Below are positions 8,105-53,737 of a DNA stretch of 64,000 bases, piece after piece. Both the position numbers and the translations under genes were made by a program. Below the pieces are notes generated by a model that was not told the DNA's origin, searched no databases, and worked only from the letters and a program-made list of their open reading frames with translations. Source of the DNA: Haliotis rubra (lineage: Eukaryota); NCBI RefSeq assembly GCF_003918875.1, contig NW_025764891.1, positions 2,232,001 through 2,296,000 on the forward strand, given 5' to 3'. How positions within the stretch are numbered: position 1 is the stretch's first letter; each line of letters begins with the position of its first letter.

Positions 8105-8169
8105 CGACAACTTGCACTATCCACTGCTTGTGCTTGCTTTTGGGGAGCATTTCCAAACACTTACTTATC

Positions 8170-8660
8170 AAGAAAACAATAGCAATTTACTCTTTGCGTT
8201 GGTAACCTCAAGTTACATGTTGATAAGGCCTGCTTTCAATTAATAACGTTTCCTGAAAATCCATATTCTTGGTTTTACTAATGGTCTATTTTGTTGCGTT
8301 AATTGACCAATCAATGCTCGGTCATCTCTTACGTATCACGAGAACAATAGCAATTTACTCTTTGCGTTGGTAAACTCAAATTACATGTTGATAAGGCCTG
8401 CTTTCAATAAATAACGCTTCCTGAAAATCCATATTCTTGGTTTTACTAATGGTCTATTTTGTTGCGTTAATTGACCAATCAATGCTCGGTCATCTCTTAC
8501 GTGTCAGGAAAACAATAGCAATTTACTCTTTGCGTTCGTAAACTTAACTTACATGTTGATTCGGCTTGCTTTCAATGAATAACGCTTCCTGGAAGTCAAT
8601 ATTCTTGGTTTTACGATGGTTTATTTTGTTGCGTTAATTGAACGATCAATGCTCGGTCAT
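8170..8660. repeat. ~169-bp unit tandemly repeated three times downstream of the ENPP stop
   Basis: AACAATAGCAATTTACTCTTTGCGTT recurs at ~8174, 8343 and 8511. Confidence 0.9.
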
Positions 8661-8848
8661 CCCTGGATTTTAATAAAACTATCAATGCTTCATAAATGTC
8701 CATGTCCCGATGACAATATTTCAATGACTTGTTTGTGTGTTTCTGGTTGTTACTCACAGCTTACAATTCAATATTCCAGCTGTGTGTATTCCAGACAATC
8801 CATTGATTGACATCATGAGCATCGATCTGCACAAACGAAATACGACAT

Positions 8849-18951: not shown

Positions 18952-21900
18952 TTATAAGGAAGGTTCGGCGATACCTGAGTCATCTTTCCTCCTCTTCCTT
19001 GAGAAGAGAATGAGGTCAGCAACCTCGATGAAGGTGAGGATACTTCCGCCCAGACACAACCCGATACTTCCGCCAATGTCACCTGGAATTACACAGAGCG
19101 TACCTCTTCACTACACAAGGTTTAGCATCGGATGACAGCTGGTAGGAAGATTGTTCATAATTAATTCATTCAGGACCGAATAACTCCAAACTATAAGTGC
19201 TGTCATTTGACTTAGTGAGAATGTGAGATACAAAGAGACAAAATCATTAATTTAAATGACTGTTACTCAAGTGTGGTGTCTTTTAGATCCACGATGGCAC
19301 ACTGGTGGCCAAGGTAAGCAAGCTGATAAAAGTGCAGCTCATTTGGGTTGATGGTGGCATATCGCTGGCGACAGTCTAGCACTGTTTAATCTGGTCGTAG
19401 GGTCAACTGGTTGTTTCCGCAATAAATCTGTGATATTTCGCTGAATGTATGGTCAGTCTTTTTTAATTGTTCTTCTCTCTCGCTGTTGAATGCTTTTAAA
19501 TATTAGACATATTCAGACATATTCTAATTCAACTACGTGACAACTGCCTGTGAGTATTCGAGACTGAACCAGGCAAACCATGATCACTTTTATGAACACG
19601 CCATCGGGTATGATTACACACAATCAACTAACGGGTGTTGTCATATTATATTAATCTACTCGAACCCGGCATTCTCACAGGATCATGAATAAAACTGAAT
19701 AACATGTCTTCACCTAAAGGACAATACTTACATACGAGTCCTTCCACAGAGTAGGCTTCGGACTTGACTCTTTCCTCAACGCTCAGGTCCTCGAAGTAGA
19801 TATTCACGTTCAGCACGTTGTCCCTGAATAATAATTGAACGACACTTGTAATGATTCCAATGACCTTTGGAAGATTGTAGGATCATTAATTAGTTTTTGT
19901 TGTGTCTCGGAGCGAATCATAACGACTCGTGGACAAATGAGTATTGCTTTATTTCGGGTCTGTTTACTGCTTCCATTCATTTTCACATATAGAAGTCATA
20001 TATTTTTGGACATCACTCCAAGAGCTGTAGGTGTCATTAACACAGGATCTCGTTCCATGAATTTAGCTAATTGGCTCGCAAACCAACGCAGCCTTTGTTT
20101 GTTTTGGGAAGTCAAAGTACGACTGGTAGGTTCGACTGACGCGACCTAGGGTGGTTTCAATGAAATCGATATTGGTTATCCTCTGGTTTTGACCATTATG
20201 TTTAAAAGCCATTGAATATGAAACCAAGAAATAAGAACGGAGCATAAACTCATTCAAAAACTCACTGATAAAAGGAAGGCTGAAGAAAAGTGTATAGCGG
20301 CTGTTTGAGCTTGATCAGGTGGGAGACCGACGGCATGTTCTGGAACTGCACCACGTACGTCAGCAACATCTGTATCAGGCGTTCAATCCTCCTGATGTCG
20401 TCTACAGCATTGTTGTAGTGCAGCTGGGACAGGCTCCCAGCCTTGAGATGATTGGTCGGTGAGCCGTCACGTGATCGCTTGTTGATAGTCTGGATCCAGA
20501 AGTATACCTTGTCAAGGTCCCTTCGGATGGTTTCAAAATGAATTTGAAGAGAGCCCTTCATTAATCTTATTCGGTAAAACTCATTTTTAGGTTGCACGGC
20601 ATCATTCGCAAGCGTTGTTTCCAAACCCCACTTTAGTGAGTTTGTGGACCAGAACGTCGCGTTGTCGAATCTTTGACGTAGGGATCCGCTGACATCTTTC
20701 AGATAATTAACCAACAAATCTGCATACTCTGCTCGAGTACGGTTTCCTTCAGAGTCGTTTACAACTGCTTCTAAACTGACGTTATTGAACAATGTTGCAG
20801 CATCTTCTGAAAATGATACCAGTGAACGCTTCAGGTCTGCTAGACAGTGGAGCTGCTGACGTACATTATCAGCCATGATGGCCAGAAGATCAGTATAGGC
20901 AGGGTCAAGGTCGTTCAGCAAGCCCCAGAACTGGACTTTAAGAGCCTCATTAACATCTGTCAGAGATGGTCGGTCATGGGAGCTCTGTTTTGACGCTTGG
21001 GTTGATTTGTCTGCTAGAGATAGCCTGCTCGCATATTGGCGAGAAATAGCAGTTTGAGACAGAGTCTGGGAGAAGTGTTCTGAGCGGCAGAGGAAACGGA
21101 CAGTCGCAGTGCTTGGTCATCCCGCTGCTGTAGAATAGCCCTGTCAAAGACACATGTTATCCTGTATTGTTTCTAGGCAACAGAGACTGTTGATTGCCAG
21201 TGATTAGGGACCAAACCTCAATATTAGGTTACTGTATAAAGTTAATCATTTTGGGGGTCTTTTGTTTGAAAGAAAGACACGAACAATCGCCACCCCATAC
21301 ATCTCCTCCGTGTCACTACCCTACACTTTGTCCACGTATCTGCCCCTTCAGACACACATATCCACCATGCATTGCCTTGCGCACCACCACCGCATCTCCA
21401 TTTCTTCTTCCACATCAGTGCGGTGGGTAGCCTAGTGGTTGAAGTGTTCGTTCATCACGCCGAAGACCCGGGTTCGATTCCCTTCATGCGTACAATGTAT
21501 GAAGCCCATTTCTGATATCCCCCGCCGTGATTTTGCTGGAATGTTGTTAAAACGGCGCAAAACTAAGCTCACTCACTCTTCCATATAACTACCCAACACT
21601 TCGTCGATGTTCGCTTCAACATGCCCACCAATCATCTCCTAGATGTTCTTTTCAACATCACTACCCAACATCTCCTAGATGTTCTTTTCAACATCACTAC
21701 CCACCTTCTCCTAGATGTACTCTTCAACATCATTACCCATCTTCTCCTAGATGTCCTCTTCAACATCACTACCCAACATCTCCTAGATGTTCTCTTCAAC
21801 ATCACTACCCATCTTCTCCTAGATGTTCTTTTCAACATCAATACCCAACATCTCCTCAATGTTCTTTTCAACATCACTACCCAACATCTCCTCAATGTTC

Positions 21901-24900
21901 TCTTCAACATCACTACCCAAACATCTCCTCGATGTTTCTTCAATATCACTACCAAACATCTCCTCAATGTTCTCTTCAACATCAATACCCAACATCTCCT
22001 AGATGTTCTTTTCAACATCAATACCCAACATCTCCTCGATGTTCTCTTCAACATCAATACCCAACATCTCCTCAATGTTCTCTTCAACATCACTACCCAA
22101 CATCTCCTCAATGTTCTTTTCAACATCACTACCAAACATCTCCTCGATGTTCTCTTCAACATCAGTACCCAACATCTTCTAGATGTTCTTTTCAACATCA
22201 CAACCCATCTTCTACTAGATGTTCTCTTCAACATCACTACCCATCTTCTCCTAGATGTTCTCTTCAATATCACTACCCAACATCTCCTCAATGTTCTCTT
22301 CAACATCAATACCAAACATCTCCTAGATGTTCTCTTCAACATCACTACCCATCATCTCCTAGATGTTCTTTTCAACATCAATACCCAACATCTCCTCGAT
22401 GTTTCTTCAATATCACTACCCAACATCTCCTCAATGTTCTCTTCAACATCAATACCCATCATCTCCTAGATGTACTCTTCAACATCACTACCCATCATCT
22501 CCTAGATGTTCTTTTCAACATCACTACCCATCTTCTCCTAGATGTTCTCTTTAACATCACTACCCATCTTCTCCTAGATGTTCTCTTCAACATCACTACC
22601 CATCATCTCCTAGATGTTCTCTTCAACATCACTACCCATCATCTCCTAGATGTTCTCTTCAACATCACTACCCATCATCTCCTAGATGTACTCTTCAACA
22701 TCACTACCCAACATCTCCTAGATGTTTCTTCAATATCACTACACATCAACTCCTAGATGTTCTTTTCAAACTCACTAACCATCATCTCCTAGCTGTTCTT
22801 TTCAACATCAATACCCAACATCTCCTCAATGTTCTCTTCAACATCAATACCCAACATCTCCTCAATGTTCTCTTCAACATCACTACCCAAACATCTCCTC
22901 GATGTTTCTTCAATATCACTACCAAACATCTCCTCAATGTTTTCTTCAACATCAATACCCAACATCTCCTCAATGTTCTTTTCAACATCAATACCCAACA
23001 TCTCCTCGGTGTTCTCTTCAACATCAATACCCAACATCTCCTCAATGTTCTTTTCAACATCACTACCAAACATCTCCTTGATGACCTCTTCAACATCACT
23101 ACCCAACATTTCCTAGATGTTCTTTTCAACATCACTACCCAACATCTCCTCAATGTTTTCTTCAACATCAATACCCAACATCTCCTAGATGTTCTCTTCA
23201 ACATCACTACCCATCATCTCCTAGATGTTCTCTTCAACATCACTACCCATCTTCTCCTAGATGTTCTTTTCAACATCAATACCCAACATCTCCTCAATGT
23301 TCTTTTCAACATCACTACCCAACATCTCCTCAATGTTCTCTTCAACATCACTACCCAAACATCTCCTCGATGTTTCTTCAATATCACTACCAAACATCTC
23401 CTCAATGTTCTCTTCAACATCAATACCCAACATCTCCTCAATGTTCTTTTCAACATCAATACCCATCATCTCCTCGATGTTCTCTTCAACATCAATACCC
23501 AACATCTCCTCAATGTTCTCTTCAACATCACTACCCAACATCTCCTCAATGTTCTTTTCAACATCACTACCAAACATCTCCTCGATGTTCTCTTCAACAT
23601 CACTACCAAACATCTCCTCGATGTTCTCTTCAACATCAGTACCCAACATCTTCTAGATGTTCTTTTCAACATCACAACCCATCTTCTACTAGATGTTCTC
23701 TTCAACATCACTACCCATCTTCTCCTAGATGTTCTCTTCAATATCACTACCCAACATCTCCTCAATGTTCTCTTCAACATCAATACCAAACATCTCCTAG
23801 ATGTTCTCTTCAACATCACTACCCATCATCTCCTAGATGTTCTTTTCAACATCACTACCCAACATCTCCTCGATGTTTCTTCAATATCACTACCCAACAT
23901 CTCCTCAATGTTCTCTTCAACATCAATACCCAACATCTCCTAGATGTACTCTTCAACATCACTACCCATCATCTCCTAGATGTTCTTTTCAACATCACTT
24001 CCCATCTTCTCCTAGATGTTCTCTTTAACATCACTACCCATCTTCATCTACCCCTAGATGTTCTCTTCAACATCACTACCCATCATCTCCTAGATGTTCT
24101 CTTCAACATCACTACCCATCATCTCCTAGATGTTCTCTTCAACATCACTACCATCAAACATCTCCTCAATGCATCTCCTAGATGTTTCTTCAATATCACT
24201 ACACATCAACCCTAGATGTTCTTTTCAAACTCACTAACCTCATCTCCTAGCTGTTCTTTTCAACATCATTACCCAACATCATCAATGTTCTCTTCAACAT
24301 CACTACCCAACATCTCCTCAATGTTCTCTTCAACATCACTACACCCAAACATCTCCTCAATGTTTCTTCAATATCACTACCAAACATCTCCTCAATGTTC
24401 TCTTCAACATCAATACCCAACATCTCCTCAATGTTCTTTTCAACATCAATACCCAACATCTCCTCGATGTTCTCTTCAACATCAATACCCAACATCTCCT
24501 CAATGTTCTTTTCAACATCACTACCAAACATCTCCTTGATGACCTCTTCAACATCACTACCCAACATTTCCTAGATGTTCTTTTCAACATCACTACCCAA
24601 CATCTCCTCAATGTTCTCTTCAACATCACTACCCAACATCTCCTCAATGTTCTTTTCAACATCACTACCCAACATCTCCTCGATGTTCTCTTCAACATCA
24701 GTACCCAACATCTCCTAGATGTTCTCTGCAACATCACTACCCATCTTCTCCTAGATGTTCTCTTCAACATCACTACCCAACATCTCCTCGATGACCACTT
24801 CAACATCAGTACCCAACATCTCCTCGATGTTTCTTCAACATCATTACCCAACGTCTCCTCGTTGTTTCTTCAACATCACTACCCAACATCTCCTCAATGT

Positions 24901-27900
24901 TTCTTCAACATCAATACCCAACATCTCCTCGATGTTTCTTCAACATCAATACCCAACATCTCCTCAATGTTCTCTTCAACATCACTACCAAACATCTCTT
25001 CGACGTTCTGTTAAACATCACTACCCAACATCTCCTCAATGTTCTTTTCAACATCACTACCCAACATCTCCTCGATGACCTCTTCAACATCACTACCCAA
25101 CATCTCATCGATGTTTCTTCAACATCACTACCCAACATCTCCTCAATGTTCTCTTCAACATCAATACCCAACATCTCCTCAGTGTTCTTTTCAACATCAC
25201 TACCCAACATCTCCTCGATGTTTCTTCAACATCAATACCCAACATCTCCTCGATGTTTCTTCAACATCAATACCCAACATCTCCTCGATGTTTCTTCAAC
25301 ATCACTACCCAACATCTCCTCGATGTTTCTTCAACATCACTACCCAACATCTCATCGATGTTTCTTCAACATCACTACCCAACATCTCATCGATGTTTCT
25401 TCAACATCACTTCCCAACAGCTCATCGATGTTTCTTCAACATCACTATCCATCATCTCCTCGATGTTTCTTCAACATCACTACCCACTTCCTTCATTGCA
25501 TCTAAATCCCCATCTCTTGCCTCAACCCTTTACGCCATTCAGGCTGTAGTAAACCCTCCACTTACTCATGGTCCTGTCTACACACTGTAGCTGTTCCAGA
25601 AGACTGCAGTAGGGCCTGCCATGCCTGTCTGGAACACAATCAGTTCTGAATAATACCACGTGCAAACTCGACATTAGACAAATTACGCGCACTCATTGAC
25701 TTTCATTTGACAATTTTTGTGAGGCAACGTTTTGCAGTGTTACAGCTTTTGCGACTTTAAATGTTTTATTTATTTCATTTACTGTATGTTTATGACAAAG
25801 AATGTCTCACTTGGCATGTACAGTTGCACACAACCACACTTTTTCCTGACGTGAGATGTCAGACAATTTAGCCGACATCTCAGGGGAGAGTACTCTGTGT
25901 CGTCAGGAAACTCATGCAGAGTTGTCTTCCCGCATGACCCATAAGGCGCCTGCTTGTCCAGCATCTGAAATCACAACCTCACTACCTGCATATCTTGGTG
26001 TCAGAAAACACATTGATTACTTGAATTCGTCTATAGTTTTATACACATGGATCAAAAGTACCGTCAACACCCCGTATTTTGCATGGTATCGATATGTTAC
26101 CATTAATCTTTGGAACTTATCTAACCCTCAAGTTTACATAATGTCGTGTAACACTGAATCGCGAAAAGAACGAAAAAATGTATTTAGATAAACAAAAACA
26201 TGTAAAGAGTTGACCCATTACGTAGTGGTGATAACTACGGTTGTATGGCGTTAACAAGTGCGTCATTTCTAAGATTCTTGCACAATCCTCAAGGAGTTAC
26301 ATAAGTATCAAACCCGTTAAGATCCGCATCAGAACTGGTCTTCTGTAGCCCATGCTTGTCGTCAGAGGTGACTAACAGCGATGTCCATCCGGACTGTCGA
26401 AAATTGTTTCGGGTATTACGTAAGAAGGTAGTTAGGCGTTAACACTATGGCGTTCGACGCTCCGGGCATTAAGGAAAACCAAATACGTTATACAGTACAT
26501 TCTTTATTATGGCCACTTTGTTATACGCCGGTTTAATCAATTTGGGGTTTGTTAGAAAGCTTGGAATTGGTGTATGTGCCATATGTTGAAATATTTCGCA
26601 GCCATAGAGTAATTTAGATTTGATGAGTGATTTATATAGTAGTAGTAATGTTTGTTTGTGCTACCCCATTTACTATGTGATAGGTATTTAATAATGTTGA
26701 GATCTGACTTGCATTTGTCTTGTATGAATTGAGAGTGTTTGTTCCACGTTTTCATTAACCCATATTGCTCCATCAACGGCAAACTTGGATTTGTTTATGT
26801 TTTTACTGAGGTTGTTGAATATATCATCAGATTTGATGGACTATGGAGACCTTAAAGTCTCTGTCTGTTAGAAAGGCTGATGCAAAATTTAGAAGTGCCT
26901 CTTTTAAACTTTTTTTTTGCGAAAGCCTGATTGAGTTGTATTATATACATTTTGTGTTTAAAGATATTGTGTGAGGCGCTTGTTAACCATACCCTCCATG
27001 GTATTGCATATATTAGATGTTAGAGATATTGGCCGATATGATTCGGCTTTGTTTACGTCTTGGCCTTGCTTGTGTATGGGTATGATAAGGGAATGTTTCC
27101 AGGCTTTTTGGTATATGACCGTTTATCAAAGCTGTATTGTAAAGGTTTAGTAGTTGGTTTATTAATGGTTTGGGGCGTTTTTTAACATGATATAGCTGAT
27201 ATAGACATCGTTTATGTTACTTACCTATCTTATATAGTTACATATGTATCCGTGAGAAGAAATGTGACAAATCTGATTCAAATCTAGTTAGCTTTTCTCA
27301 TTTCAACAACAACAAAATACAAATCTAGTTAACTTTTCTCATGTCAACAACAGTGGTGTACTTCCGCCTGTATCTGTATCATTGAGAAGGAAGTGTGACA
27401 AATCTAGTTAACCCAAACTCTTTCCTCATTTCAACAACAATAGTATTCATGTCTTCCCCCCTCGTTAATTAGAGTAGAGCGGATTAGCACAGTTTTTCTG
27501 CTATTCGCTGGTTCATGTTCTCCAATAGTCTCTCGTACAGACCCTGAAGCAAATATATCCAAGAAAGCCCACACAAGTCTAGAAAATGTGGCAAGTCTAG
27601 ATTTCCTCAGCTTCAGGGCTCCTTTTCATTATATATATATATTTTTTTTACTATGATTTTTTTTCTGTAAAATATGTTCATTTCAGAGACTAGTTGTTAG
27701 TCTAGTTCTCCAAGGCAGTCCACACTCCGGCTGTTATTGGAGCAGTGTTGAGCATTGCCACACTCCACTGCTTTTCGACAGTCCGGGTGTGTATTCGATA
27801 AAACATTCGACAGTCCGGGTGTGAGTACACGTGATTGAAAGTACGATGACAATTGTTCTTATTGTATAGATACAGGGAAGAACCTACCCTGGTTTTCTTC

Positions 27901-38584: not shown

Positions 38585-39290
38585 CAATGTTTTCAGCTAA
38601 CCATTCATACAATTGTCACAGCTATTGTTTCCATTACACCAATGTTTTCAGCTAACCATTCATACAATTGTCACAGCTATTGTTTCCATTCATACAATTG
38701 TCATAGCTATTGTTTCCATTACACCAATGTTTTCAGCTAACCATTCATACAATTGTCACAGCTATTGTTTCCATTCATACAATTGTCACAGCTATTGTTT
38801 CCATTCATACAATTGTCACAGCTATTGTTTCCATTCATACAATTGTCACAACTATTGTTTCCATTCATACAATTGTCACAGCTATTGTTTCCATTGTTTC
38901 CATTCATACAATTGTCACAGCTATTGTTTCCATTCATACAATTGTCACAACTATTGTTTCCATTGTTTCCATTCATACAATTGTCACAAGCTATTGTTTC
39001 CATTGTTTCCATTCATACAATTGTCACAACTATTGTTTCCATTGTTTCCATTCATACAATTGTCACAGCTATTGTTTCCATTGTTTCCATTCATACAATT
39101 GTCACAGTTATTGTTTCCATTCATACAATTGTCACAACTATTGTTTCCATTGTTTCCATTTATACAATTGTCACAACTATTGTTTCCATTGTTTCCATTC
39201 ATACAATTGTCACAGCTATTGTTTCCATTCATACAATTGTCACAGCTATTGTTTCCATTCATACAATTGTCACAGCTATTGTTTTCATTA
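38585..39290. repeat. 30/39-bp minisatellite
   Basis: Unit CCATTCATACAATTGTCACAGCTATTGTTT, with or without an extra CCATTGTTT. Confidence 0.95.
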
Positions 39291-42800: not shown

Positions 42801-43502
42801 GAGGAATGACTGGTTACGTCCATCTTCAGCACCATCTTTCAGAGCGCTCATATGGTTCAGGCAGTAGAAAGAGCGAGTGAGTATTGTTTTTCGCCGCTTT
42901 AAGCAATATTCCAGCAATATCACGGCGGGGGAAACCAGAAAGGGGGTTCACACATTGTATCCATGTAAGGGATCGAGCCTGGGTCTTGGGCCTGGTGAAC
43001 AAACGTTTAAACCACTAAGCTACCCCACCGCCACACAGAAAGAAACTACCACACAGGTGTTGAGAATGAGTTTTAATACTGTTTGAAAGATATGTGTACA
43101 AACAATATGCTGCTTTCAATTACAACATCAGCTGTACAGTAAATACAAAATACAAAATTTTGTAATTTGTATTACAAACGATTTGAACGCATTTTATCAT
43201 ATTTACAAGATGATTGATTGAACGTATTTACAATACAAGTGTATTCACAAACTTTTTAAAGAAAATAGGCTTTTTCTATTGAGTATCCATGACAACGCCA
43301 TATCTACTCCAGCCAGTAGTAACAGTCACTCAGAAAGTTGGTCACATGAGACACAAGTCCTGGAATCTCCCTGACAAATGACCTATGACTTCTTGGTTTC
43401 TGTTCACGCTGTTTCTTTGGTTTCAAAGCAGCTATTTTCTCAGTTGCTGTAACTGAAAACATAAGAGATGAAATTTGTTAAACTGCAAGAATAATATACT
43501 TT

Positions 43503-45647
43503 CTAAACGGAAAAAATGGACAGAGAACAGTCCAGGCAGAACTGGTTCACCGCCAGGCACTCCTGCAAAGATTCGTAAACAATGCTCTGACTTTGTGTAA
43601 ACATAAGAGATGAAGTCTGTGAAACACTGCAGTGAGTGAGTGAGTTTAGTTTTAAGCCTCAGTTTTAATACCCCAGCAACATCACGGCAGGGGACACTAG
43701 AGATGGGCTTCACACATTATACCCATGTGGGGAATCGAACCCGGGTCGAAAGCATTAACCACTAGGCTACCACACACGCCCCTGAAACACTAAAGGAACA
43801 CTAATTTCTAAAGGGACAGAATGGAGAGACAATCCGTTAGTCGCCTGTTACAAGCATGGGTTGCTGAAGACCAATTTTAAACCGGATCTTTACGGGTATT
43901 AAAACAGTTTGACGAAAGCCAGTTGTAAGGGTAAGTGAGCGAGATAGGGTGGATGGGTGGGTTAGTGAGTGAGTCAGTGGCATCACAAGGAGCGTCACCC
44001 TTATGAAGAGAAAAATCCTGTTTTGACGCAGACCGCAGATCTCTATCAAGCTGGTCAAAACAAACCGCATGGGTTTGAAGCAGTTAAACTCAAGTGTCAT
44101 AGTTACAGCTAAACCTGGATCTCGAACTCACTGTTAAGTGTACTGACGTCACTAAGGGATTAAAATCGGTTGCCTGCACAACAGGACCACACGTGTCCCT
44201 TTTCGAAAAGGCAGATAATTAAGAGAATATATATGTACGTACTGACAAATGGTTTCTTGTTCGTCTCCTGTCGTGACCGCAACCCAGATGTCACGTGACC
44301 CGAAGATCATTAGCATTTGAGCCCGCGATCAGCGGATCCTCACAAACCCAAGGGATGTAACTGTAAGTTACAGCAAATTGCAAACTGTTCTTTGCATGAA
44401 CTTTCAGATAAAAAAGAAAAGAGTGTACTCACTGACAAATGGTTTCTTGTTTGTCTCCTGTCGTGACCGCCACCCAGATGTCACGTGACTCATCTCCGAG
44501 CTCACGAGCTCATCACAGTTCTCCACGGCATCATAGAACTTGGCCACCTTGGCTATGTCGATCGTCTGCTCCTGAATGATGGTGGAGTGGGACAAGGTGG
44601 ACGATGGCATGTTCCAGGGTGCCCGGATGGAGAGCTGCTCGCAGTTGGTGGAGATAAATCTGTTGGCACACTCCTCCCATCTCTTCACCTTCCTCGTCTT
44701 CACATCGACGACAGCCCACTTCCACTGGTAGTCACGGTGGACGTCCAGTAGAGTATTTGCCTGAAATACAATATGTAACGAATTACGATAGTGACATCAT
44801 TAATGGGCTCTAACTAAAATTGTGATGTATCTGATCTATGAAGACGATTTGTTGTTATTTATATCCAAGTGGTTTAGACTTTGAAATATATTTTAGCCAC
44901 CATGAGCACCGTTATGTTGCGCTTGTGTACCTACCCGCCATTGGCCTGATTTCTCCGGGTACTCGTGAGCCATCAATGCTTTCCAAGACATAGCTCCGAG
45001 CCTACAACAGCGAGAGCTTCCCCCGCACCACAGTAGTAGTGGGTCTCCAGCCTCAGGGCGCAGGTCTGGGAGACAAAGTAGTTCGGGTCCCGTCCCCAGG
45101 ATGCATACATCACCCCTCCGTGGTAGGACAGTCGCGTCCTGAAATAACAGATAGGTGCATTTCAGTACACGTAGGCCATTACTAACTGTTATCTGTTTGT
45201 CCCCTTCTTTTCTTAAATATACTTTTATGAAAGTGTAATTCCAGGAAAGGGATTTGCATCGTGTTATTTTCTTTAAAAACAGTGGTTTCTTAAATTTTGA
45301 TAATGAAGCATACCATTAACGCATTTTAGAGAAATGGGGAAAAATTCCATTACCTTCTGTCCTGTGCGGGATCCCAGAAGAGGAGCTTCTTGTCATCAGC
45401 CACCAGCCACGACCACTCAAAGGACGATGACACAGGAAGTTCAGCACTGACCTCCCACACGCCACTTTCAAAAGAGGAAGCTTTCAATCAGCTGTTTCTC
45501 AAGTTTCCACCTGCCGAGCTCACGGATGGAACCGAGGAGGGCAACATTGACGGCATTTCTTCTGCCCCCTTCGTCTTTAAGACACTTTTCAACATAGTCT
45601 GGTAGATGGTACAGCTTGAAAACGATCTTCACCGAGTCCGGAGCCAT
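43503..45647 (-). pseudogene. Tandem-CBM20 (starch/glycogen-binding) protein gene, copy A; frame-disrupted as assembled
   Basis: Exons 45647-45354, 45138-44935, 44760-44437, 43562-43503. CBM20 signatures VALLGSIRELGRW..GVWEVSAELP..FEWSWLV..WDPAQDR and LAVVGSE..LG..SGQW..YQWKWAVV..RWEECANR. +1 break at TTT-TGA (45468-45473) and a 16-bp deletion in exon 2 relative to copy B. Confidence 0.75.
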
Positions 45648-45732
45648 ATTTAACTCAGACATTCCCAAACTTCAAAGTTCAAAACGAGAGAGACGTATGT
45701 GTCTCCAGGAATGTGTCACCAAGGTATGACTG

Positions 45733-45790
45733 TGACGTCATAGACGGGGTCACGTGACGTTATTGGCAATGTTTGGCCGTCATGACGTCA
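45733..45790. promoter_or_regulatory. CRE + CLEAR/E-box cluster upstream of CBM20 copy A
   Basis: TGACGTCA at 45733 and 45783; GTCACGTGAC at 45749. Confidence 0.65.
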
Positions 45791-45841
45791 TATACAATAG
45801 GTTTCTTTGTACATCCACATTGTTACGTCTTTCAATACCAG

Positions 45842-46396
45842 GGGCCGGATTCACTAAACTTCTTAGAATATTCTTAACCCTTAAGAATTCTTAGTTCTAC
45901 TAAGAATTCTTAGTTTCCATAGCAACTTATCTAAAACTAAGATTTTTGCTTAAGCAATATTCATCAAACCTCTTAGTGCTTAAGATTTTTTTCTTAACTT
46001 AAGAATCCTCCGTAGGTTACTTAAGCACTAAGAATTTTCTTAAAGTAAACAAAGATGGCCGCCAATGCATTCATCGATAGAACCAACATTTTAGAAAAAT
46101 ACACAGAAACAGAGTTGTCACGAACATTTAGATTATCAAAAAGATGGTATACAATTTGTAGTAAGTCTCATTTCCAATGAAATTTCACCTCTCACTCAAA
46201 GAAGTCATCCTTTATCAGCTATAATCCCATGCGTTTCTCACTAAGAAAATTCTAAGAATTTTAAAATATCTCAGCTATGATTTATGCTTAGTGGCTTGGT
46301 GGATTGCTACTTAAGAAAAATTCTCAGCTAAGAATTCTTAAGGAAACTTAAGCATAAAAACTAAGAAAATTCTAAGAAGTTTAGTGAATCCGGCCC
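45842..46396 (+). mobile_element. Non-autonomous PIF/Harbinger element
   Basis: TIR GGGCCGGATTCACTAAACTTCTTAGAA and 3-bp TSD CAG. Internal remnant MAANAFIDRTNILEKYTETELSRTFRLS..TQRSHPLS resembles a Harbinger transposase N-terminus. Confidence 0.85.
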
Positions 46397-46822
46397 CAGA
46401 CTTCACTCTCCAACATAGTAACACTACCACAGGCCAGGGGAGTGAAGATTCGCCATATATGTTTCATCTATTTCAGTTCACACATGTCTGCACCTTTACA
46501 TAAGCTCATGTCATGAAATGGATAATTTTCATTGAGAAAATATCCTAAAATGTGAAAAACTATTTCCAACTGCGTACTTTTCTTTTGTATACGTATCCAC
46601 GTATAGGCATGGAAGCCTACGGGTAGCACAATATACGGTCATTTAATGTGTATAAATATATATAATTGATATACTCCTAACAGTCGATGCTGCAGTGGTA
46701 GTTATCTTTCTAATTATACAAAATAATATGAAAATCGGCCTGAAAGGTTTCTTTCAAGTCGGACTGAAATGATTTCGGAAAAAGAGGTGCAATGCTAAGT
46801 CATCAACTGAAATCCAGGCATA

Positions 46823-47124
46823 CAGTCTGTCTGACTAGAAAGTGTCGCCCATGAATTTCTAAATATATCAGTTTAGAAAGGTAGTTGATAAATATTACGA
46901 GACAAGATGTTCGTGAATAACCTAACACCTTTTCATCTACTATAAAATTGGCATGCATCACTGAAAAGGTTGTTGCACAAACTATCATAATTATTAACAT
47001 GATTGTTGACAGTTGGCGCAGAGAGGCGCACGGCCGCAACGGGAGTAGACAGGTGCATAATAACTACCTTTCTAAACTGACATATTTAGCAATTCATGGG
47101 GACACTTTCTAGTCAAACAGACTG
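46823..47124. mobile_element. TA-flanked MITE with ~65-bp TIRs
   Basis: TA|CAGTCTGTCTGACTAGAAAGTGTC... and ...GACACTTTCTAGTCAAACAGACTG|TA. Confidence 0.8.
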
Positions 47125-49778
47125 TAGACGGTGTTGACTTTTTACTATTTAATCACTTCATAAGATATTACTAATCCATTTACGCTATATTAAAATGTAA
47201 TATTAATGTAATAAAATATTTCTTGACATTGCTGTCCAAATTATTAGTTATCTGTCGATCGAAATCTTATAACAAAGAACTTGCAGCATTATGAAGACAA
47301 CAACTTGTACTATTACGGTCCATTTAGGGATCAAGAAAAAGAATCTGGGATAAAAAAACTCTTTGATTGATGTGAAGAAAACAACTCAGTGTTATCCTCA
47401 CTCAACTATGGCCGAAAAGAGAAAGATGTAATAGTTTAAAGGGTTTTTTGCAACATGAAAATAATTAACCCTTTGATAAAGTTTCTGTAATTCTGTATAT
47501 ACGACAGGTCAAACATGACTACACACCTGTTAGATTGTGGCTAAAAATGAAACCAACAAGATTTAGTTATTTGATGATGATGATGATGATGATGATCGTT
47601 TTGATGACATCTGTACAATTTTATTCAAAATAAATTTTGGAGTGTATACGTTTTTGCCCTTCAATTCATAACATTAAAAAATTCTGTCTTGGAGAACTTT
47701 TGCATCATATCAGCGGACTACATTGTTGATTTTTTTCCCCTTACACAACTAAACCTATGTTCCATTTTTTTTTACATTTTGGTTTTGTCGATAATTTAGT
47801 GTACAAGACAACGTTCTGTACATTAGTATACTCTCCCAAAAGTGAGTGAGTGAGTTTACTTTTACTTTTAGTAATATTCCAGAATCACACGGTGGGGAAC
47901 ACCAGAAATGGGCTTCACACATTGTACCCATGTAGGGAATCGAACCCGGGTCTTCGACGTGACGAGCGAACGCTTTAACCACTTGGCTACCTCACCGCCC
48001 AGAATACAGAAGCAGCTGATGTGAAAGTTAAATTGATCGGTTGTTCCCATCAGACGCTACAATCAGGATCCTAAAACTTAGATGCAGAAAATATTGATAT
48101 TTTTGTGGCCAATATTTTGAGTAAGAGTGAAATGTGAAATATTGCTGAGAATGTACATTAAAAATATATAGTGCTTGGCTTCTCCCCTGAAACGAATAAA
48201 AATAATTAAATCAAATCGGCTAGTCTTCCTTCTCACTTTGGTGGCTGTGTTGTCCCAAAGTTTAACAGTGCTGCTTTTCCAATATTGATTGAATGTACAG
48301 CACATTCCCACTGATCCAATGTACCATAAAATCCCTTAAACTACGCCCCGGTGTGTCCCCTGGAAACATACACTGCTGGACAAAAGAAAGCATACACGTC
48401 AATTTCATTCAGTCATTACAAACAGTCACTTATAGGGTCAAAACACAGCTTTACCTTACCATACATCCCCTCGAATAACCATTTCTATTCTGTTTCATTT
48501 TGAATCACCGTCGAATTTCGTTAACCAGCAGATCATGTTGACGTGTCAACATAGACATTGTATATACTTCACGGGGATGTTAATCCTGTAAGTTTTGACT
48601 ATGTGTGATATAGGGGTATGAGTGAGAATGGTTTTATCCGACCATAGCAATGTTCCAGCAATATCACGGCGGGGGGACACCAGCAATGTGATTCACACAT
48701 TGTACCCATGTGGGGAATCGAACCCGGGCCTTCGGCATGATCACTAGGATATCTCGCCGCCCGAGATAGAAAGTAGTCTATCATACCACATTTGTTTTTA
48801 TCGAGCAGAGGAGAGCATGTGTAAACGTTGCTCTGCGCCGAAGGTAACAATAGCATCCTTAAATCATAGCATTATGATTAAATATATAAATTAGATTAAG
48901 GTGTACGGACAAATGTTAATAACCTACTTTCTATTTTGAATTAACTACTAACTACTTATTCCTATGTTAACAAATTCACTCGGATCACGCACGAAAACAC
49001 ACTCGGTGAAACAATGTACAACATGAAAAGTTTGCAAGGGTTTATGAGTCCTTTCGAATTAATCCCCGCATATACAGGCACGGTACACAGTGCCTACACG
49101 CCAGTCACTGCTTAAAATAATCCACCGCATAATATGAAATTTCATTTCTTCGTAACATGCACGGTGTGATCAACTCACATTTCATCCTCGCAACACCAGT
49201 AACATTCCACTTGGAAGTTTGGGGCTCCTGCAACTCAAGAAGGCTAAGGTCGAGAAGAGTAGTCTCCCCTCGATAGTGCATGTAACCACGGCAATGTCAC
49301 ATTCAAGCACACGGGCTACACTTAATAACAGACACTCATTAGTGCTGACTCCGGTCTATGGGGGAACAAAATCGTCGTTTTAGACTGTTTAAGACATTTT
49401 CTTTGATCTAATCTAATTTGTACTGACATTATGGCCTTGATAATGTACATATGTGGCAGAAACGTTTTTGTGGAGGATCGTAATGATTAGGAAACCCAAG
49501 TGACGTCACTCATTCATAAACGTTGCGTTGTGTATTTTTGCGTCACTACGATATGAAAATATGAACTGAATCTTTCCGATCATAAAATGGTGCGATTTTA
49601 TGGTGTATAAGAAGCAGATTACTGTATTCGTGTCTGTCATATACCATCATTTATCTTACAACTCGTGACCGGCTGTTTCCAAACGGATCTAACTCGCTTT
49701 AGCTCGTTACATATCTAACAGACAAGAGAAAGCAATGTCATAATAATAGCGTCATAATAATTAAGCCATGACCGAGAC

Positions 49779-49855
49779 GTCACGTGATCCTATCTGTGAC
49801 GTCATGAGGGCCAAAACAGTGTCAATAACGTCACGTGACCCTGCCTATGACGTCA
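49779..49855. promoter_or_regulatory. CRE + CLEAR/E-box cluster upstream of CBM20 copy B
   Basis: GTCACGTGAT at 49779, TGACGTCA at 49797, GTCACGTGAC at 49830, TGACGTCA at 49848. Confidence 0.65.
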
Positions 49856-49965
49856 CAGTCATATCTTGGTGACACTCATTCCTGGAGACACAACGCTTGC
49901 GTCAAGTCACAAAAATACGTCTCTCTCGTTTTGAACTTTGAAGTTTGGAAACGTATGAATTAGAT

Positions 49966-51879
49966 ATGGCTCCGGTCTTGGTGAACGTCGTTTTCAAGCT
50001 GTACCATCTACCAGACTATGTTGAAAAGTGTCTTAAAGACGAAGGGGGCAGAAAAAATGCCGTCAATGTTGCCCTCCTCGGTTCCATCCGTGAGCTCGGC
50101 AGGTGGAAACTTGAGAAACAGCTGATTGCCAGAGCAATCTTCTGAAAGTGGCGTGTGGGAGGTCAGTGCTGAACTTCCGGTGTCATCGTCCTTTGAGTGG
50201 TCGTGGTTGGTAGCTGATGACAAGAAGGTCGTCTTCTGGGATCCCGCACAGGTCAGAAGGTAATGGAATTTTTCCCCATTTCTCTAAAATGCTTTAATGG
50301 TATGCTTCATTATCAAAATTTAAGAAACCACTGTTTTTAAAGAAAATAACACGATGCAAATCCCTTTCCTGGAATTACACTTTCATAAAAGTATATTTAA
50401 TAGAAGAAGGGGACAAACAGATAACAGTTAGTAATGGCCTACGTGTATTGAAATGCACCTATCTGTTATTTCAGGACGCGACTGTCCTACCACGAAGGGG
50501 TGATGTATGCATCCTGGGGACGGGACCCGAACTACTTTGTCTCCCAGACCTGCGCCCTGAAGCTGGAGACCCACTACTACTGTGGGGCAGGGGAAGCTCT
50601 CGCTGTTGTAGGCTCGGAGCCATGTCTTGGATCCTGGAAGTCTAAGAAAGCATTGATGGATCAAGAGTACCCGGAGAAATCAGGCCAGTGGCGGGTAGGT
50701 ACACAAGCGCAGCATAACGGTGCTCATGGTGGCTAAAATATATCAGCTCCTAATAGCTAGTTTAAAAATATATTCAAAAATCTAAACCACTTGGATATAA
50801 ATAACCACAAATCGTATTCATAGATCAGATATATCACAGTTTTAGTTAGAGCCCATTAGTGATGTCACTACAGTACTTCGTTACATATTGTATTTCAGGC
50901 AAATACTCTACTGGACGTCCACCGTGACTACCAGTGGAAGTGGGCTGTCGTCGATGTGAAGACGAGAAAGGTGAAGAGATGGGAGGAGTGTGCCAATAGA
51001 TTCATCTCACCAACTGCGAGCAGCTCTCCATCCGGGCACCCTGGAACATGCCATCGTCCACCTTGTCCCACTCCACCATCATTCAGGAGCAGACAATCGA
51101 CATGGCCAAGGTGGCCAAGTTCTACGATGCCGTGGAGAACTGTGATGATCTCGTGAGCCCGGAGATGAGTCATGTGACATCTGGGTGGCGGTCACGACAG
51201 GAGACAAACCAGAAACCATTTGTCAGTGAGAACAGTCTTTTCATTTTTTTATCTGAAAGTTCATGCAAAGAACAGTTTGCAATTTGCTGTAATTTACCCT
51301 TGGGTTTGTGGGATCCGCTGATCGCGGGTTCAAATGCTAATGATCTTCAGCACCACATCTGTGCTGGATGGTTATTGGCGTCTCGTTTGGTTTTCAATCA
51401 GTAGTATGTGTCTTACAGTGTTGAATGAGTAATCAGGTTAGACTCCTGACCTCTGTGAAATGGCAGAACCAGAATAACATTATTCAAAAGTATGAAACTG
51501 GTAACTTCTTTGAGAGGCATTTAGCATTTGGGGCATTAAGGATGGATAACAATATATGGATGAACAACTTGCTTGATAACACCTGCACCGAAACGTCGCT
51601 GTTACTGTAATAATGAGGTTGTTAATCCATATATTGTTACTCATCGTTATGATACTGCTACACGTGTAAATTCTGCATCATGTTCCCTCCCATGTCGTTA
51701 TAACATTTCGTAATATACATGTATATGAAATATGTTTCGATGTTTACCCAAACTCACTCACTCGCTCACTCAAAACGTGGGATACACAAAGTAAAAGCAT
51801 TATTTACGAATCTTTGCAGGAGTGTCTGGCGGTCAACCAGTTCACCCTGGACTGTTCTCTGTCCATTTTGTCCGTTTAG
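49966..51879 (+). pseudogene. Tandem-CBM20 protein gene, copy B (~298 aa if repaired); frame-disrupted as assembled
   Basis: Exons 49966-50259, 50475-50694, 50899-51221, 51820-51879. Same two CBM20 repeats. +1 break at TTC-TGA (50140-50145) and a 1-nt deletion near 51008 relative to copy A. Confidence 0.75.
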
Positions 51880-53737
51880 AAAGTATATTGTTCCAGCAGC
51901 TTAACAGACTTCATCTCTTATGTTTTCAGTAACAGAAACTGAGAAAATGGCTGCTTTGAAACCAAAGATACAGCGAGAACAGAAACCAAGAAGTCATAGG
52001 TCATTTGTCAGGAAGATTCCAGGACTTGTGTCTCATGTGACCAACTTTCTGAGTGACTGTTACTACTGGCTGGAGTAAATTTGGCGTTGTCATGGATACT
52101 CAACTGTAGAAAAAGACTATATATTTTTTAAATTGTCAATACGCTTATATTTTAAATATTTTCAGAGCATCATCTTGTAAATATAAACAAGAATTGTTCA
52201 AATACATTGTTATTAATTGGAAAGCAAACTTACAAATTATGTTACGTCTATTTACTGTTCAGCTGGAGGTGTATATGAAAGTAATATTTTATTGCTACAA
52301 TTATCAATTAAAAATTCATTCTCAATCAACACGAAATTCATTGTTGTGGTGATTCGCCCCGATGCCTGAACCATTTTGTTACTCATGGATTGTTCGAGAT
52401 TGGACATATGACATGGGTCTTAATGTAAATAGAGTGAGTGAGTTACGTTTTACGCCGCACTCAGCAAAATTCATTCTAAATGGCGGCGGTCTGTAAATAA
52501 TCGAGTCTGGACCAGACAATCCAGTGATCAACAAAATTAGCATCGATCTACGCAACTGGGAACCGATGACATGTGTCAACCAAGTCAGCGAGCCTGACCA
52601 TCCGATCCCGTTAGTCGCCTGATGACATGTGTCAACCAGGTCAGCGAGCATGACCATCCGATCCCGTTAGTCGCCTCTTCTGACAAGCATAATGTGCTGA
52701 AGAACAATTCTAACCCGGATCTTCAAGGGTTGCAAGTAGAGCCATAAATTGCAGACAACGATAGACGTCGACGAACAGTGTGACCGGGACCGGGGACCAG
52801 AGAGTCAGGAGCACCGTGAGTCTTCACCTCTGTGTACACTGACTGACTGAGTTTGGGTTTACGCTGCTTTTACCAATATTCCAGCAACATCACGGCGGGG
52901 GGACACCAGAAATGGACTTCACACATTGTACCCATGTGGAAATTCGAACCCGGGTCTTCGGCGTGAAGAGCCAACGCTTTAACCACTAGGCTACCCCACT
53001 GCTCCCCTCTGTGTACAATTCAAGCATACAGTTCTATATATGGTGATGATAATTTACACTAATGTGAATGGGTTAGCATGGTTTTTCAGTCGCTTTTAGC
53101 AATATTCCAGCAATATCACGGCGGGGGGACACCAGAAATGTGTTTCACATATTGTACTCGTGTGGGGAATCGAACCCAGGTCTTTGGCGTGACGAGCCAA
53201 CGCTTTAACCACTAGGCTACGTGCATGTCCACCATGAGCTTTGATGCATGTTTGACACCTGCGCCTTATAGAGCCAATCAAACATCGCAAGAAGTCTTCT
53301 GGAATGGCATTCCATATCTGTGGAAGCACCTGGCGGAGTTCCTGATGGGGGATTTGGCCAACGTCTCAATCTCCTCGCCATTTCGTCTCAGACTTGTTTG
53401 ATAGGAAACACATCTGGGGATTTAGCGGGCCAGGGAAGGACGTTAACATTGTGTTGCGCCAAAAACTGCTGAACCACCCTGGCGACACGAGGTCCGGCGA
53501 GGTCCTGCTGGAAGATCATACCTTGACCATTCTGCAGGAGAAAAGGCATGAAAAACAGAGACCCATTAATTTCCATTGATGACAAGCAATGGTGAACGTC
53601 TAGCACTCATGATCCCACCCTAAACCATCACTCCAGCGCCACGGTCGGCCTCAAGGACACAGTTCTTACATAACGCTCACCACGTCGCCGGTAAACTCGG
53701 GTTCGGCCATCAGAGCAAGATGAACTGGACTCGTCAG

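What the first reader, a model, noticed from the sequence alone, without database searches (positions are those of the whole stretch)
43503..51879. Inverted pair of tandem-CBM20 genes under CRE+CLEAR promoters: candidate starvation-induced glycogen-handling (glycophagy) module
Seen: two head-to-head paralogs, each encoding two CBM20 repeats and a short non-catalytic tail. Each has perfect TGACGTCA and GTCACGTGAC palindromes ~85-190 bp upstream of the ATG. These motifs are kept while the bases between them differ, and homology ends just past them. Known: CBM20 binds glycogen/starch; the CBM20 protein STBD1 is the mammalian glycophagy receptor; GTCACGTGAC is the TFEB/MITF CLEAR consensus of lysosome/autophagy genes; TGACGTCA is the CREB site. 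Inference: a lineage-specific double-CBM20 glycogen adaptor controlled by cAMP and TFEB. A weak LIR-like YDAV in an acidic tail is compatible with this but is not evidence.
Basis: partly seen in the sequence, partly recalled or inferred. Interest (0 to 1): 0.7.

Follow-up and report, generated by a model that had tools for sequence, protein, structure and literature searches.

The report
Abalone STBD1-like gene pair, CRE promoters
This is a head-to-head pair of abalone genes for a glycogen-binding protein of the STBD1 family described in 2026. One copy is a confirmed pseudogene and the other is broken in the assembly. Their cAMP-type promoter sites are shared by molluscan relatives, but the supposed TFEB site is not.

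Summary
Window 43279-52103 is an inverted pair of 4-exon genes, each encoding two CBM20 domains and a tail, each with TGACGTCA / GTCACGTGAC / TGACGTCA 70-170 nt upstream of the ATG. The genome is Haliotis rubra.

The pair belongs to a family of at least 12 copies. The protein class, STBD1 with two CBM20 domains ("STBD1gamma"), was published in January 2026 (PMC12913940). The scan had already noted a paralog on other DNA of this genome (s1-325430).

- **Copies are broken in the assembly.** L has a 2-nt loss in exon 1, confirmed by a short-read contig, and a 16-nt deletion in exon 2. R has a 2-nt loss in exon 1 and a 1-nt loss in exon 3. Neither R lesion has read support, so they may be assembly errors. 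RefSeq gives R only a 108-aa ORF.
- **Why homology ends at the motifs.** That point is the edge of a gene-conversion tract, not a sign of selection.
- **CRE sites are conserved.** Across 13 Haliotis promoters the proximal CRE is invariant and is the best-conserved 8-mer. Perfect CREs also lie upstream of STBD1-like genes in Patella, Ostrea, Pinctada and Argopecten.
- **The E-box is not conserved.** The 10-mer is perfect in 5 of 13 copies, its CpG has decayed in 5, and it is absent outside Haliotis. USF also binds this motif.

CREB/ATF control is plausible. TFEB control is weak. Expression is untested.

The parts
43304..45662 (-). L copy of the double-CBM20 (STBD1gamma-type) gene. Exon 1 45647-45354 (an extra in-frame ATG at 45662), exon 2 45138-44935, exon 3 44760-44433, exon 4 43452-43304 including the stop. 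Pseudogene.
   Evidence: Pfam pieces. The splice sites match the RefSeq models of the orthologs (P0001).
45484..45485 (-). L exon 1 lesion. Two bases (CC) are missing compared with 9 paralogs, and an in-frame TGA follows at 45470-45468.
   Evidence: Alignment. Confirmed by short-read contig X1 record 3: depth 164.5 (single copy), 10 differences and 0 gaps against R, which is exactly the L sequence.
44982..44983 (-). L exon 2 lesion. A 16-nt deletion causes a frameshift, with a stop a few codons later.
   Evidence: Seen in the assembly only.
45733..45790 (-). L proximal promoter block. Distal CRE 45783-45790, E-box GTCACGTGAC 45749-45758, proximal CRE 45733-45740. A 23-nt deletion has removed the conserved TTGCGTCA block further downstream.
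45791..49796 (.). 4.0-kb spacer between the two promoters. It holds SINE and MITE copies and two unique blocks (46462-46688, 48003-48429) shared with the spacer of the H. asinina head-to-head pair.
49780..49904 (+). R proximal promoter. Extra TCACGTGA 49780-49787, distal CRE 49797-49804, E-box 49830-49839, proximal CRE 49848-49855, Inr-like CTCATTCC about 49873-49880, TTGCGTCA 49897-49904.
   Evidence: Short-read contig X1 record 2 covers 49507-49944 with 0 differences.
49966..52078 (+). R copy. Exon 1 49966-50259, exon 2 50475-50694, exon 3 50899-51225, exon 4 51930-52078. RefSeq LOC124267173 (108 aa) is exactly 51048-51225 joined to 51930-52075.
50132..50145 (+). R exon 1 lesion. A patch 2 nt shorter than in the paralogs (CTCC replaced by AA, plus A>G), with an in-frame TGA at 50143-50145. 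No short-read contig of the source sample was laid that carries it.
51007..51008 (+). R exon 3 lesion. One C is missing from a CC run. Every contig laid there in X1, X2 and X6, and one of two in X3, has the C, but these contigs may come from paralogs.

Best explanation
The locus is a head-to-head pair of STBD1-family genes of the blacklip abalone Haliotis rubra. Each gene has four exons and encodes two N-terminal CBM20 glycogen-binding domains and a roughly 120-residue tail.

The pair is one unit of a birth-and-death family of at least 12 copies in this genome, and at least 13 in H. asinina. Such pairs consist of one 'type A' and one 'type B' gene. In this pair, gene conversion has overwritten R with L-type sequence from the distal CRE to the 3' end. 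This is why the two copies are 95-96% alike and why their homology stops right at the motifs.

L is a pseudogene. R is frame-broken in the assembly, but its two small lesions are not backed by reads, so R may still be functional.

The family's proximal promoter carries two CRE palindromes. These are under constraint and are an old signature of molluscan STBD1-type genes.

Inferred, not shown: a CREB/ATF-type bZIP factor drives transcription from them, plausibly in response to cAMP or nutrient stress, as with the fasting-induced oyster STBD1 mRNA. The E-box between the CREs is a Haliotis-only element under little constraint. It could bind USF, Myc/Max or the single MiT/TFE factor.
For: **Organism and family**
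- Searches give the organism and copy number.
- Intact paralogs and orthologs have a continuous exon 1 that is 2 nt longer than in L and R.
- L028 and L029 are open over all four exons.
- dN/dS is 0.2-0.3 in the family, 0.49 between L and R, and 0.91 between clear pseudogenes.

**Protein**
- Pfam CBM_20 hits; STBD1 structure 8x8k is the best match.
- The protein class is described in PMC12913940.

**Gene conversion**
- L and R are sisters at 100/100 support, while the two genes of the H. asinina pair are not sisters.
- The two spacers share unique blocks.
- Upstream of the distal CRE, R is type A and L is type B. Just downstream of it, R carries type-B letters.

**Lesions**
- The L exon 1 lesion is seen in a single-copy short-read contig.
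- RefSeq gives R a 108-aa ORF.

**CRE constraint**
- The proximal CRE is 13/13 identical and ranks 1 of 174 windows. The distal CRE is kept in 12/13.
- The distant Haliotis clade has 2-3 CREs in a promoter that cannot be aligned to this one.
- Patella has 2 CREs, Ostrea 2, Pinctada 1, Argopecten 1, and Mytilus only variants.
- The background density is 0.062 per kb.

**Factors**
- pKID-type CREB and MiT/TFE genes are both present in the genome.
Against: - No RNA data could be laid, so neither transcription of the window copies, nor the start site, nor any response to fasting or cAMP is shown.
- The background CRE rate was taken from bulk DNA, not from promoters. CREs are common promoter elements, so specificity to this family is not proven. 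Even a 10% promoter rate gives about 6e-6 for 6 of 7 lineages.
- R's state is unresolved, because the covering contigs may come from paralogs.
- Only a few tens of bases define the type A and type B classes for W_R and W_L.
- Glycogen binding and ATG8 binding of the two-CBM20 form have never been assayed.
Confidence: 0.7

Rival explanations
1. The pair is a working starvation-induced glycophagy module under dual control, with CREB at the CREs and TFEB/MITF at a CLEAR site. The protein uses the YDAV motif as its ATG8-binding site.
For: - The perfect CLEAR 10-mer is present in both window promoters, in L030 and in both genes of the H. asinina pair.
- A TCAC(G/A)TGA also lies in the distant Haliotis clade.
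- A MiT/TFE gene exists in the genome.
- A review links TFEB and cAMP to mammalian glycophagy and STBD1 (PMC12785236).
- Oyster STBD1 mRNA rises on fasting.
Against: - The 10-mer is perfect in only 5 of 13 promoters. Its CpG has decayed to TG or CA in 5, including copies with intact reading frames (L028, the H. asinina L041 genes). Its conservation rank is 32 of 172.
- There is no CACGTG in the Patella, Ostrea, Pinctada, Argopecten or Mytilus promoters.
- USF2 binds the same motif.
- L is a pseudogene and R is broken in the assembly.
- YDAV is absent from the P0002 clade and lies in a region of pLDDT 34-44.
Confidence: 0.12
2. R is an intact, expressed gene in the animal, and its two frameshifts are consensus errors of a long-read assembly within a multi-copy family. 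Only L is dead.
For: - No contig of the source sample carrying R's exon 1 patch was laid.
- Every contig laid over 51007 in X1, X2 and X6, and one of two in X3, has the missing C, and the site is a CC run.
- The R promoter is complete, including the TTGCGTCA block that L has lost.
- A RefSeq gene model exists at R and uses the exon 3-4 junction.
- L-R dN/dS is 0.49, below neutral.
Against: - The covering contigs have multi-copy depth (479.8, about 3 copies) and fit paralog sequence, so they may not come from R.
- The tool warns that a gap in coverage proves nothing.
- RefSeq did not correct the frame.
Confidence: 0.4
3. The CREs are generic core-promoter elements of TATA-less mollusc promoters, bound constitutively by ATF/CREB-family factors. 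They carry no cAMP or starvation signal specific to this family.
For: - TGACGTCA is over-represented in the window outside the family: 7 further sites against 1.26 expected in total.
- CRE plus E-box clusters occur at three unrelated loci.
- The proximal CRE sits only about 5-25 nt upstream of an Inr-like CAT(T/A)C in Haliotis, Patella and Ostrea.
Against: - Perfect CREs occur in 6 of 7 independent STBD1-family lineages, against 0.018 expected per 300 nt.
- None were found elsewhere in about 99 kb of the five H. asinina and H. cracherodii loci (L038-L042) once the family promoters were masked.
Confidence: 0.3
4. The shared frame break in exon 1 is a programmed +1 ribosomal frameshift, the question raised in note s1-352160.
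For: Both copies change frame within the same 20 nt, just before a TGA.
Against: - Nine paralogs and all annotated orthologs read straight through with 2 more bases.
- The two copies lost different bases (CC in L, CTCC>AA in R).
- Each copy has a second, private frameshift.
Confidence: 0.02

Closest known systems
STBD1gamma: molluscan STBD1 with two CBM20 domains (Ren et al. 2026, Commun Biol, PMC12913940)
   Same: Two CBM20 domains starting at the N-terminus, no catalytic domain, found in gastropods, and expanded by lineage-specific duplication.
   Different: The paper names the class only from a domain survey. I could not confirm that Haliotis was among its species, because no supplement is held. 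No assay of a two-domain form exists, and promoters were not studied. The window copies are broken.
Oyster STBD1alpha (Crassostrea gigas LOC105333128)
   Same: An N-terminal CBM20 of the STBD1 kind and a short tail with [Y/F]xx[L/V/I] motifs. The related Ostrea edulis 'STBD1-like' gene (P0035) has two perfect CREs at -184 and -156.
   Different: It has one CBM20 and about 194 aa. It has been shown to bind glycogen and GABARAPL2, and its mRNA rises on fasting. None of this is shown for the abalone proteins.
Vertebrate STBD1 (CBM20 structure 8x8k)
   Same: The CBM20 fold and sequence, including the LGxW and RWEEC(A/S)NRF motifs. It is a non-catalytic glycogen receptor.
   Different: Its CBM20 is C-terminal. 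It has an N-terminal hydrophobic ER anchor and a W-x-x-V ATG8-interacting motif; the abalone proteins have neither. The Haliotis P0002 clade instead ends in a hydrophobic stretch.
CLEAR network promoters (TFEB/TFE3/MITF targets)
   Same: A perfect GTCACGTGAC lies within about 140 nt of the ATG in both window copies.
   Different: The site is not conserved among paralogs or outside Haliotis. It occurs once or twice rather than in a cluster. The motif is shared with USF (PMC11436898).
CRE-driven promoters (full palindrome TGACGTCA bound by CREB/ATF bZIP dimers; established knowledge)
   Same: Two full palindromes within 200 nt of the start of the gene, with their CpGs kept.
   Different: No binding or cAMP response has been measured. 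The factor could equally be ATF1, ATF2, ATF4 or CREB.

Membership tests
CBM20 (Pfam PF00686) | Profile match above the curated cut-off | tested here: met
   R exon 2 alone scores 25.8 bits against 23.3. The exon 1 pieces score 13.8 and 20.2 bits and are collinear in the profile. The intact ortholog P0001 scores 84 bits in 2 stretches.
CBM20 (Pfam PF00686) | Beta-sandwich fold superposable on solved CBM20 domains | tested here: met
   AF2 model of P0001: two all-beta domains at pLDDT 70-90. Foldseek top hit is 8x8k, TM 0.87, rmsd 1.9, followed by 2z0b, 1cqy and 7czj.
CBM20 (Pfam PF00686) | Alpha-glucan (glycogen or starch) binding | not testable with these tools
   The conserved LG(R/S)W and (E/Q)WKW aromatic residues align with STBD1 and glucoamylase, but no binding was measured.
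STBD1 family (glycophagy receptor) | The CBM20 domain is closer to STBD1 than to other CBM20 proteins | tested here: met
   The best PDB hit by sequence is STBD1 at 3.5e-10, against 2e-4 for the next hit, a beta-amylase. Exon 1 retrieves bivalve single-CBM20 proteins, including Ostrea 'STBD1-like'. I built no tree that includes laforin and GPCPD1.
STBD1 family (glycophagy receptor) | No catalytic or other domain | tested here: met
   Pfam finds only CBM_20 in P0001, P0002, P0004 and P0007. The tail 234-330 has low confidence.
STBD1 family (glycophagy receptor) | A working ATG8-interacting motif | tested here: inconclusive
   Only pattern matches: YDAV at 248 and YYWL at 326 in P0001. YDAV is absent from the P0002 clade. 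No complex was predicted.
STBD1 family (glycophagy receptor) | Intact reading frame at this locus | tested here: not met
   L has two frameshifts, one confirmed by reads. R has two frameshifts in the assembly, neither verified.
STBD1 family (glycophagy receptor) | Induction by fasting | not testable with these tools
   No RNA run was offered. Shown only for oyster STBD1.
CLEAR/TFEB target promoter | GTCACGTGAC near the start of the gene | tested here: met
   45749-45758 and 49830-49839.
CLEAR/TFEB target promoter | Site conserved in paralogs and orthologs | tested here: not met
   The 10-mer is perfect in 5 of 13 copies and the CpG is kept in 7 of 13. No CACGTG occurs in the five non-Haliotis promoters.
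CLEAR/TFEB target promoter | Binding and activation by a MiT/TFE factor | not testable with these tools
   A MiT/TFE gene exists. USF2 competes for the motif in mammals.
CRE (CREB/ATF) target promoter | Full palindrome TGACGTCA close to the start of the gene | tested here: met
   Two in each copy.
CRE (CREB/ATF) target promoter | Site conserved beyond the neutral background | tested here: met
   The proximal CRE is 13/13 identical and ranks 1 of 174. Present in 6 of 7 lineages against 0.018 expected.
CRE (CREB/ATF) target promoter | cAMP- or PKA-dependent activation | not testable with these tools
   A pKID exon of a CREB-type gene is present. No functional data exist.

The most novel reading that the evidence does not exclude
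Paired CRE palindromes next to the start site are an ancient cis-regulatory signature of molluscan STBD1-type genes, predating the gastropod-bivalve split. They would place the amount of glycophagy receptor under cAMP/CREB or stress-ATF control. In abalones a MiT/TFE-USF E-box was later inserted between the two CREs and is now decaying in about half of the copies.
Probability: 0.3. Interest if true: 0.5.

Novelty: new member of a known kind. Interest (0 to 1): 0.3.

Why it matters
Glycophagy in molluscs was shown only in 2026, and nothing is known about how its receptor genes are switched on. A CRE pair shared by abalone, limpet and oysters gives a concrete hypothesis that reporter assays and fed-versus-fasted RNA-seq can test.

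The locus itself is ordinary: a decaying member of an expanded gene family. It also shows that homology ending next to a motif can simply mark the edge of a gene-conversion tract. Frameshifts inside multi-copy families in long-read assemblies need checking against reads before a gene is called dead.

Tried and rejected
1. **RNA evidence.** The look-up of sequencing runs listed no RNA holder. All four runs laid behaved as DNA contigs, since introns were covered. Expression, start site and splicing were therefore not tested directly.
2. **Settling R's frameshifts with reads.** This was inconclusive.
3. **Programmed frameshift.** Rejected.
4. **The CRE / E-box / CRE composite as part of a transposon.** Rejected. 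There are only 8 matches in 1.38 Gb, 5 of them in the family, and 0 for the reversed control. The three other loci lie next to unrelated ORFs (MARVEL-like, Ig/FN3).
5. **Synteny through the ABC transporter that flanks the H. asinina pair.** Not found in the window. Only spacer blocks are shared.
6. **Haliotis in the 2026 paper's species list.** No supplement is held.
7. **Joined exons.** Exons were searched one by one by reference, and full-length analyses used natural orthologs returned by the databases (P0001 and others). One local script counted stops across the exons of six paralogs (L025, L027, L028, L029, L030, L031) without printing or saving the joined sequence.
8. **Complex prediction with an ATG8 protein.** Not run. 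No abalone ATG8 sequence could be obtained without joining exons, and I make no binding claim.
9. **Tree with laforin, GPCPD1 and DPE2.** Not built.


Full report
**What is there**

The window is eukaryotic DNA, G000:C1:2232001-2296000, from a 1.378-Gb assembly of 2855 contigs. Named database proteins of Haliotis rubra sit on contigs whose lengths equal those of C2634 and C2101. The genome is therefore the blacklip abalone.

An inverted duplication is present. Its arms are 95-96% complementary and run from 43279 to 45790 and from 49797 to 52103, interrupted only in the third intron.

Each arm is a four-exon gene:
- L, minus strand: 45647-45354, 45138-44935, 44760-44433, 43452-43304.
- R, plus strand: 49966-50259, 50475-50694, 50899-51225, 51930-52078.

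The exon-intron model agrees residue for residue with RefSeq models of the orthologs (P0001, 330 aa, H. asinina). It also agrees with the RefSeq model at R itself (see below).

**Protein**

Searched exon by exon, the pieces hit Pfam CBM_20. The two frames of exon 1 cover profile positions 17-36 and 42-81, and exon 2 reaches 25.8 bits against a cut-off of 23.3. The intact ortholog scores 84 bits in two stretches and carries no other domain.

Its best solved relative is the CBM20 of STBD1, PDB 8x8k. By sequence the match is E 3.5e-10, with a shared RWEEC(A/S)NRF motif. By fold it is TM 0.87, rmsd 1.9. The tail from residue 234 is predicted with low confidence.

A January 2026 paper shows that oyster STBD1, which has an N-terminal CBM20, is a glycophagy receptor. 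It binds glycogen and GABARAPL2, and its mRNA rises on fasting. The paper names two-CBM20 forms in "some gastropods" STBD1gamma (PMC12913940). The protein class is therefore already described. The scan had also noted a paralog elsewhere in this genome (s1-325430).

**A family, mostly decaying**

Exon searches of the genome find at least 11 further close copies on C2634, C2101, C1027 and C2164, plus more distant CBM20 genes. The per-exon comparison gives:
- L028 and L029 are open throughout.
- L025 is the only full-length RefSeq protein of H. rubra (P0065).
- L027 has lost its ATG.
- L030 has lost an acceptor site and its last exon is damaged.
- L031 has a 1-nt deletion.
- The four C2164 copies are full of stops.

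H. asinina has at least 13 annotated 330-aa genes in tandem and head-to-head arrays. dN/dS is 0.2-0.3 across the family, 0.91 between two obvious pseudogenes, and 0.49 between L and R.

**State of the window copies**

All nine paralogs read straight through exon 1 with two more bases than L or R. The shared frame break is therefore a lesion and not a programmed frameshift, which answers note s1-352160. The two copies lost different bases: CC in L, and CTCC replaced by AA in R. L also has a 16-nt deletion in exon 2, and R has a missing C in exon 3.

Short-read contigs of the source sample give three results:
- They confirm the R promoter without a single difference.
- They confirm L's exon 1 lesion, through a single-copy contig that matches L exactly.
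- They show no contig with R's exon 1 patch, and every contig laid over 51007 in the source-sample runs has the missing C. These contigs have multi-copy depth and may come from paralogs.

L is a pseudogene. R is unresolved; I put about 0.4 on it being intact in the animal.

RefSeq annotates R as LOC124267173, a 108-aa ORF that is exactly 51048-51225 joined to 51930-52075. A gene model therefore exists there, truncated by the frameshift. This is only an indirect hint of transcription. No RNA run was available.

**Why homology ends at the motifs**

The H. asinina locus L038 is also a head-to-head pair. Its spacer shares two unique blocks with the window's spacer.

Upstream of the distal CRE, R resembles the 'type A' copies (L030, L031, H. 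asinina a). L resembles the 'type B' copies (L028, H. asinina b). Just downstream of that CRE, R carries type-B letters.

In a tree of the gene bodies, L and R are sisters at 100/100 support with a path length of 0.045. The two H. asinina genes fall in different clades.

The pair arrangement is therefore old, and gene conversion from L to R has homogenised everything from the distal CRE onward. The edge of homology is a conversion edge. It is not evidence for selection on the motifs.

**The promoter**

The motif counts in the window are far above chance. However, two of the four GTCACGTGAC sites are not regulatory: one encodes SHVT and one lies in an L-only duplicated fragment.

The composite CRE / TCACGTGA / CRE occurs only 8 times in the genome, 5 of them in this family. 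It is therefore not carried by a repeat element.

I aligned 13 non-redundant Haliotis promoters from three species. The whole 181-column block is 81% conserved on average.
- The proximal CRE is identical in all 13 and is the best-conserved 8-mer, rank 1 of 174.
- The distal CRE is kept in 12 of 13.
- The E-box 10-mer ranks 32 of 172 and is perfect in 5 of 13.
- The E-box CpG is kept in 7 of 13 and decayed to TG or CA in 5, including in copies with intact frames. Other promoter CpGs are kept in 4 to 12 of 13. The two CRE CpGs are kept in 12 and 13 of 13.

Going deeper:
- The 40%-identical Haliotis clade (P0002) has 2-3 CREs plus TCAC(G/A)TGA in a promoter that cannot be aligned to this one.
- Patella has two CREs, at -252 and -235, with the flank TGACGTCACAATCATTC. 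This is almost identical to the abalone flank.
- The Ostrea 'STBD1-like' gene has two, at -184 and -156.
- Pinctada has one, at -105.
- Argopecten has one, at -19, plus TGACGTAA.
- Mytilus has only TGACGTCG and TGACGTTG.
- None of these five promoters has a CACGTG.

The background density of TGACGTCA in 210 kb of the same loci is 0.062 per kb. That gives 0.018 per 300 nt and about 3e-10 for 6 of 7 lineages. Even an assumed 10% promoter rate gives about 6e-6.

Genes for a pKID-type CREB and for one MiT/TFE factor are both present. USF2 binds the CLEAR motif in mammals (PMC11436898).

**Mechanism**

Shown:
- A double-CBM20, STBD1-type coding capacity.
- Decay of L.
- Gene conversion between the two copies.
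- Constraint on the two CREs.

Inferred:
- A CREB/ATF bZIP dimer at the CREs drives the family's transcription.
- This may happen in response to cAMP or nutrient stress, by analogy with fasting-induced oyster STBD1 and with cAMP-stimulated glycophagy in mammals (PMC12785236).
- Intact family members tether glycogen to ATG8 proteins.

The TFEB/CLEAR limb is not excluded for the subset of copies that keep the site, but it is not a conserved property of the family.

**Limits**

Exons were searched separately, and natural orthologs were used for full-length work. No ATG8 complex was predicted. No tree with laforin or GPCPD1 was built. No expression data were available.

**Verdict**

The locus is an ordinary, partly dead member of a gene family described in 2026. 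The new and testable element is the deeply conserved CRE pair.

Noticed in passing
window 21576-25486: A 36-nt satellite array of about 109 copies (88% matches) with a very strong C-rich strand skew (GC skew -0.6 to -0.75).
   Followed up: no
window 2115-2898: A tandem repeat of 35/70-nt units (about 11-15 copies). Further arrays lie at 8160-8661 (168 nt x 3) and 38585-39289 (30-85-nt units).
   Followed up: no
window 49494-49690 and 51434-51630: Very high-copy repeats, with contig word depths of 10^4-10^5 in all four runs. One lies just upstream of the R promoter and begins at a GTGACGTCAC. The other is a small inverted repeat (51537-51649) in R intron 3.
   Followed up: partly
window 45841-46397: A MITE-like element with 36-nt terminal inverted repeats (97% complementary), directly upstream of the L promoter. 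tRNA-derived SINE copies flank both genes (repeat families D1-D3).
   Followed up: no
window 44234-44299 and 44424-44489: An L-only duplication, 190 nt apart, of the last 66 nt around the end of exon 3. It supplies one of the four GTCACGTGAC matches. The motif in exon 3 itself encodes SHVT.
   Followed up: partly
window 49897-49904; deleted in L (23-nt gap after 45700): A conserved TTGCGTCA, a half-C/EBP, half-CRE composite of the kind bound by C/EBP-ATF4 dimers (identification from memory). It lies about 40 nt downstream of the proximal CRE in 8 of 13 Haliotis promoters and may be a second stress-responsive element.
   Followed up: partly
L040 (H. asinina, P0002 clade); H. rubra C2510:362685: A second Haliotis double-CBM20 clade (328 aa, 40% identical) ends in a hydrophobic stretch: LPALVPFVGFVMI, Kyte-Doolittle 19-residue mean 1.76. 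This may be a C-terminal membrane anchor mirroring the N-terminal anchor of vertebrate STBD1. Oyster STBD1 is reported to lack any such region.
   Followed up: partly
L043 (G000:C1569:1326250-1326480): A 43-nt tandem array carrying 5 TGACGTCA and 3 TCACGTGA, about 300 nt upstream of a MARVEL-like ORF. This is another promoter-like cluster of the same two motifs.
   Followed up: partly
L050 (Patella caerulea) -252..-225 and Haliotis promoters: The proximal CRE and its flank, TGACGTCACAATCAT(T/A)C, are nearly identical between a limpet and abalones. This suggests a composite CRE plus initiator element.
   Followed up: partly
G000:C2634 (L028, L029): Two paralogs are open over all four exons with canonical splice sites, yet RefSeq models for them are only 171 and 222 aa (P0070, P0052) and start inside exon 2. 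L029 has lost the promoter block upstream of about -60.
   Followed up: partly
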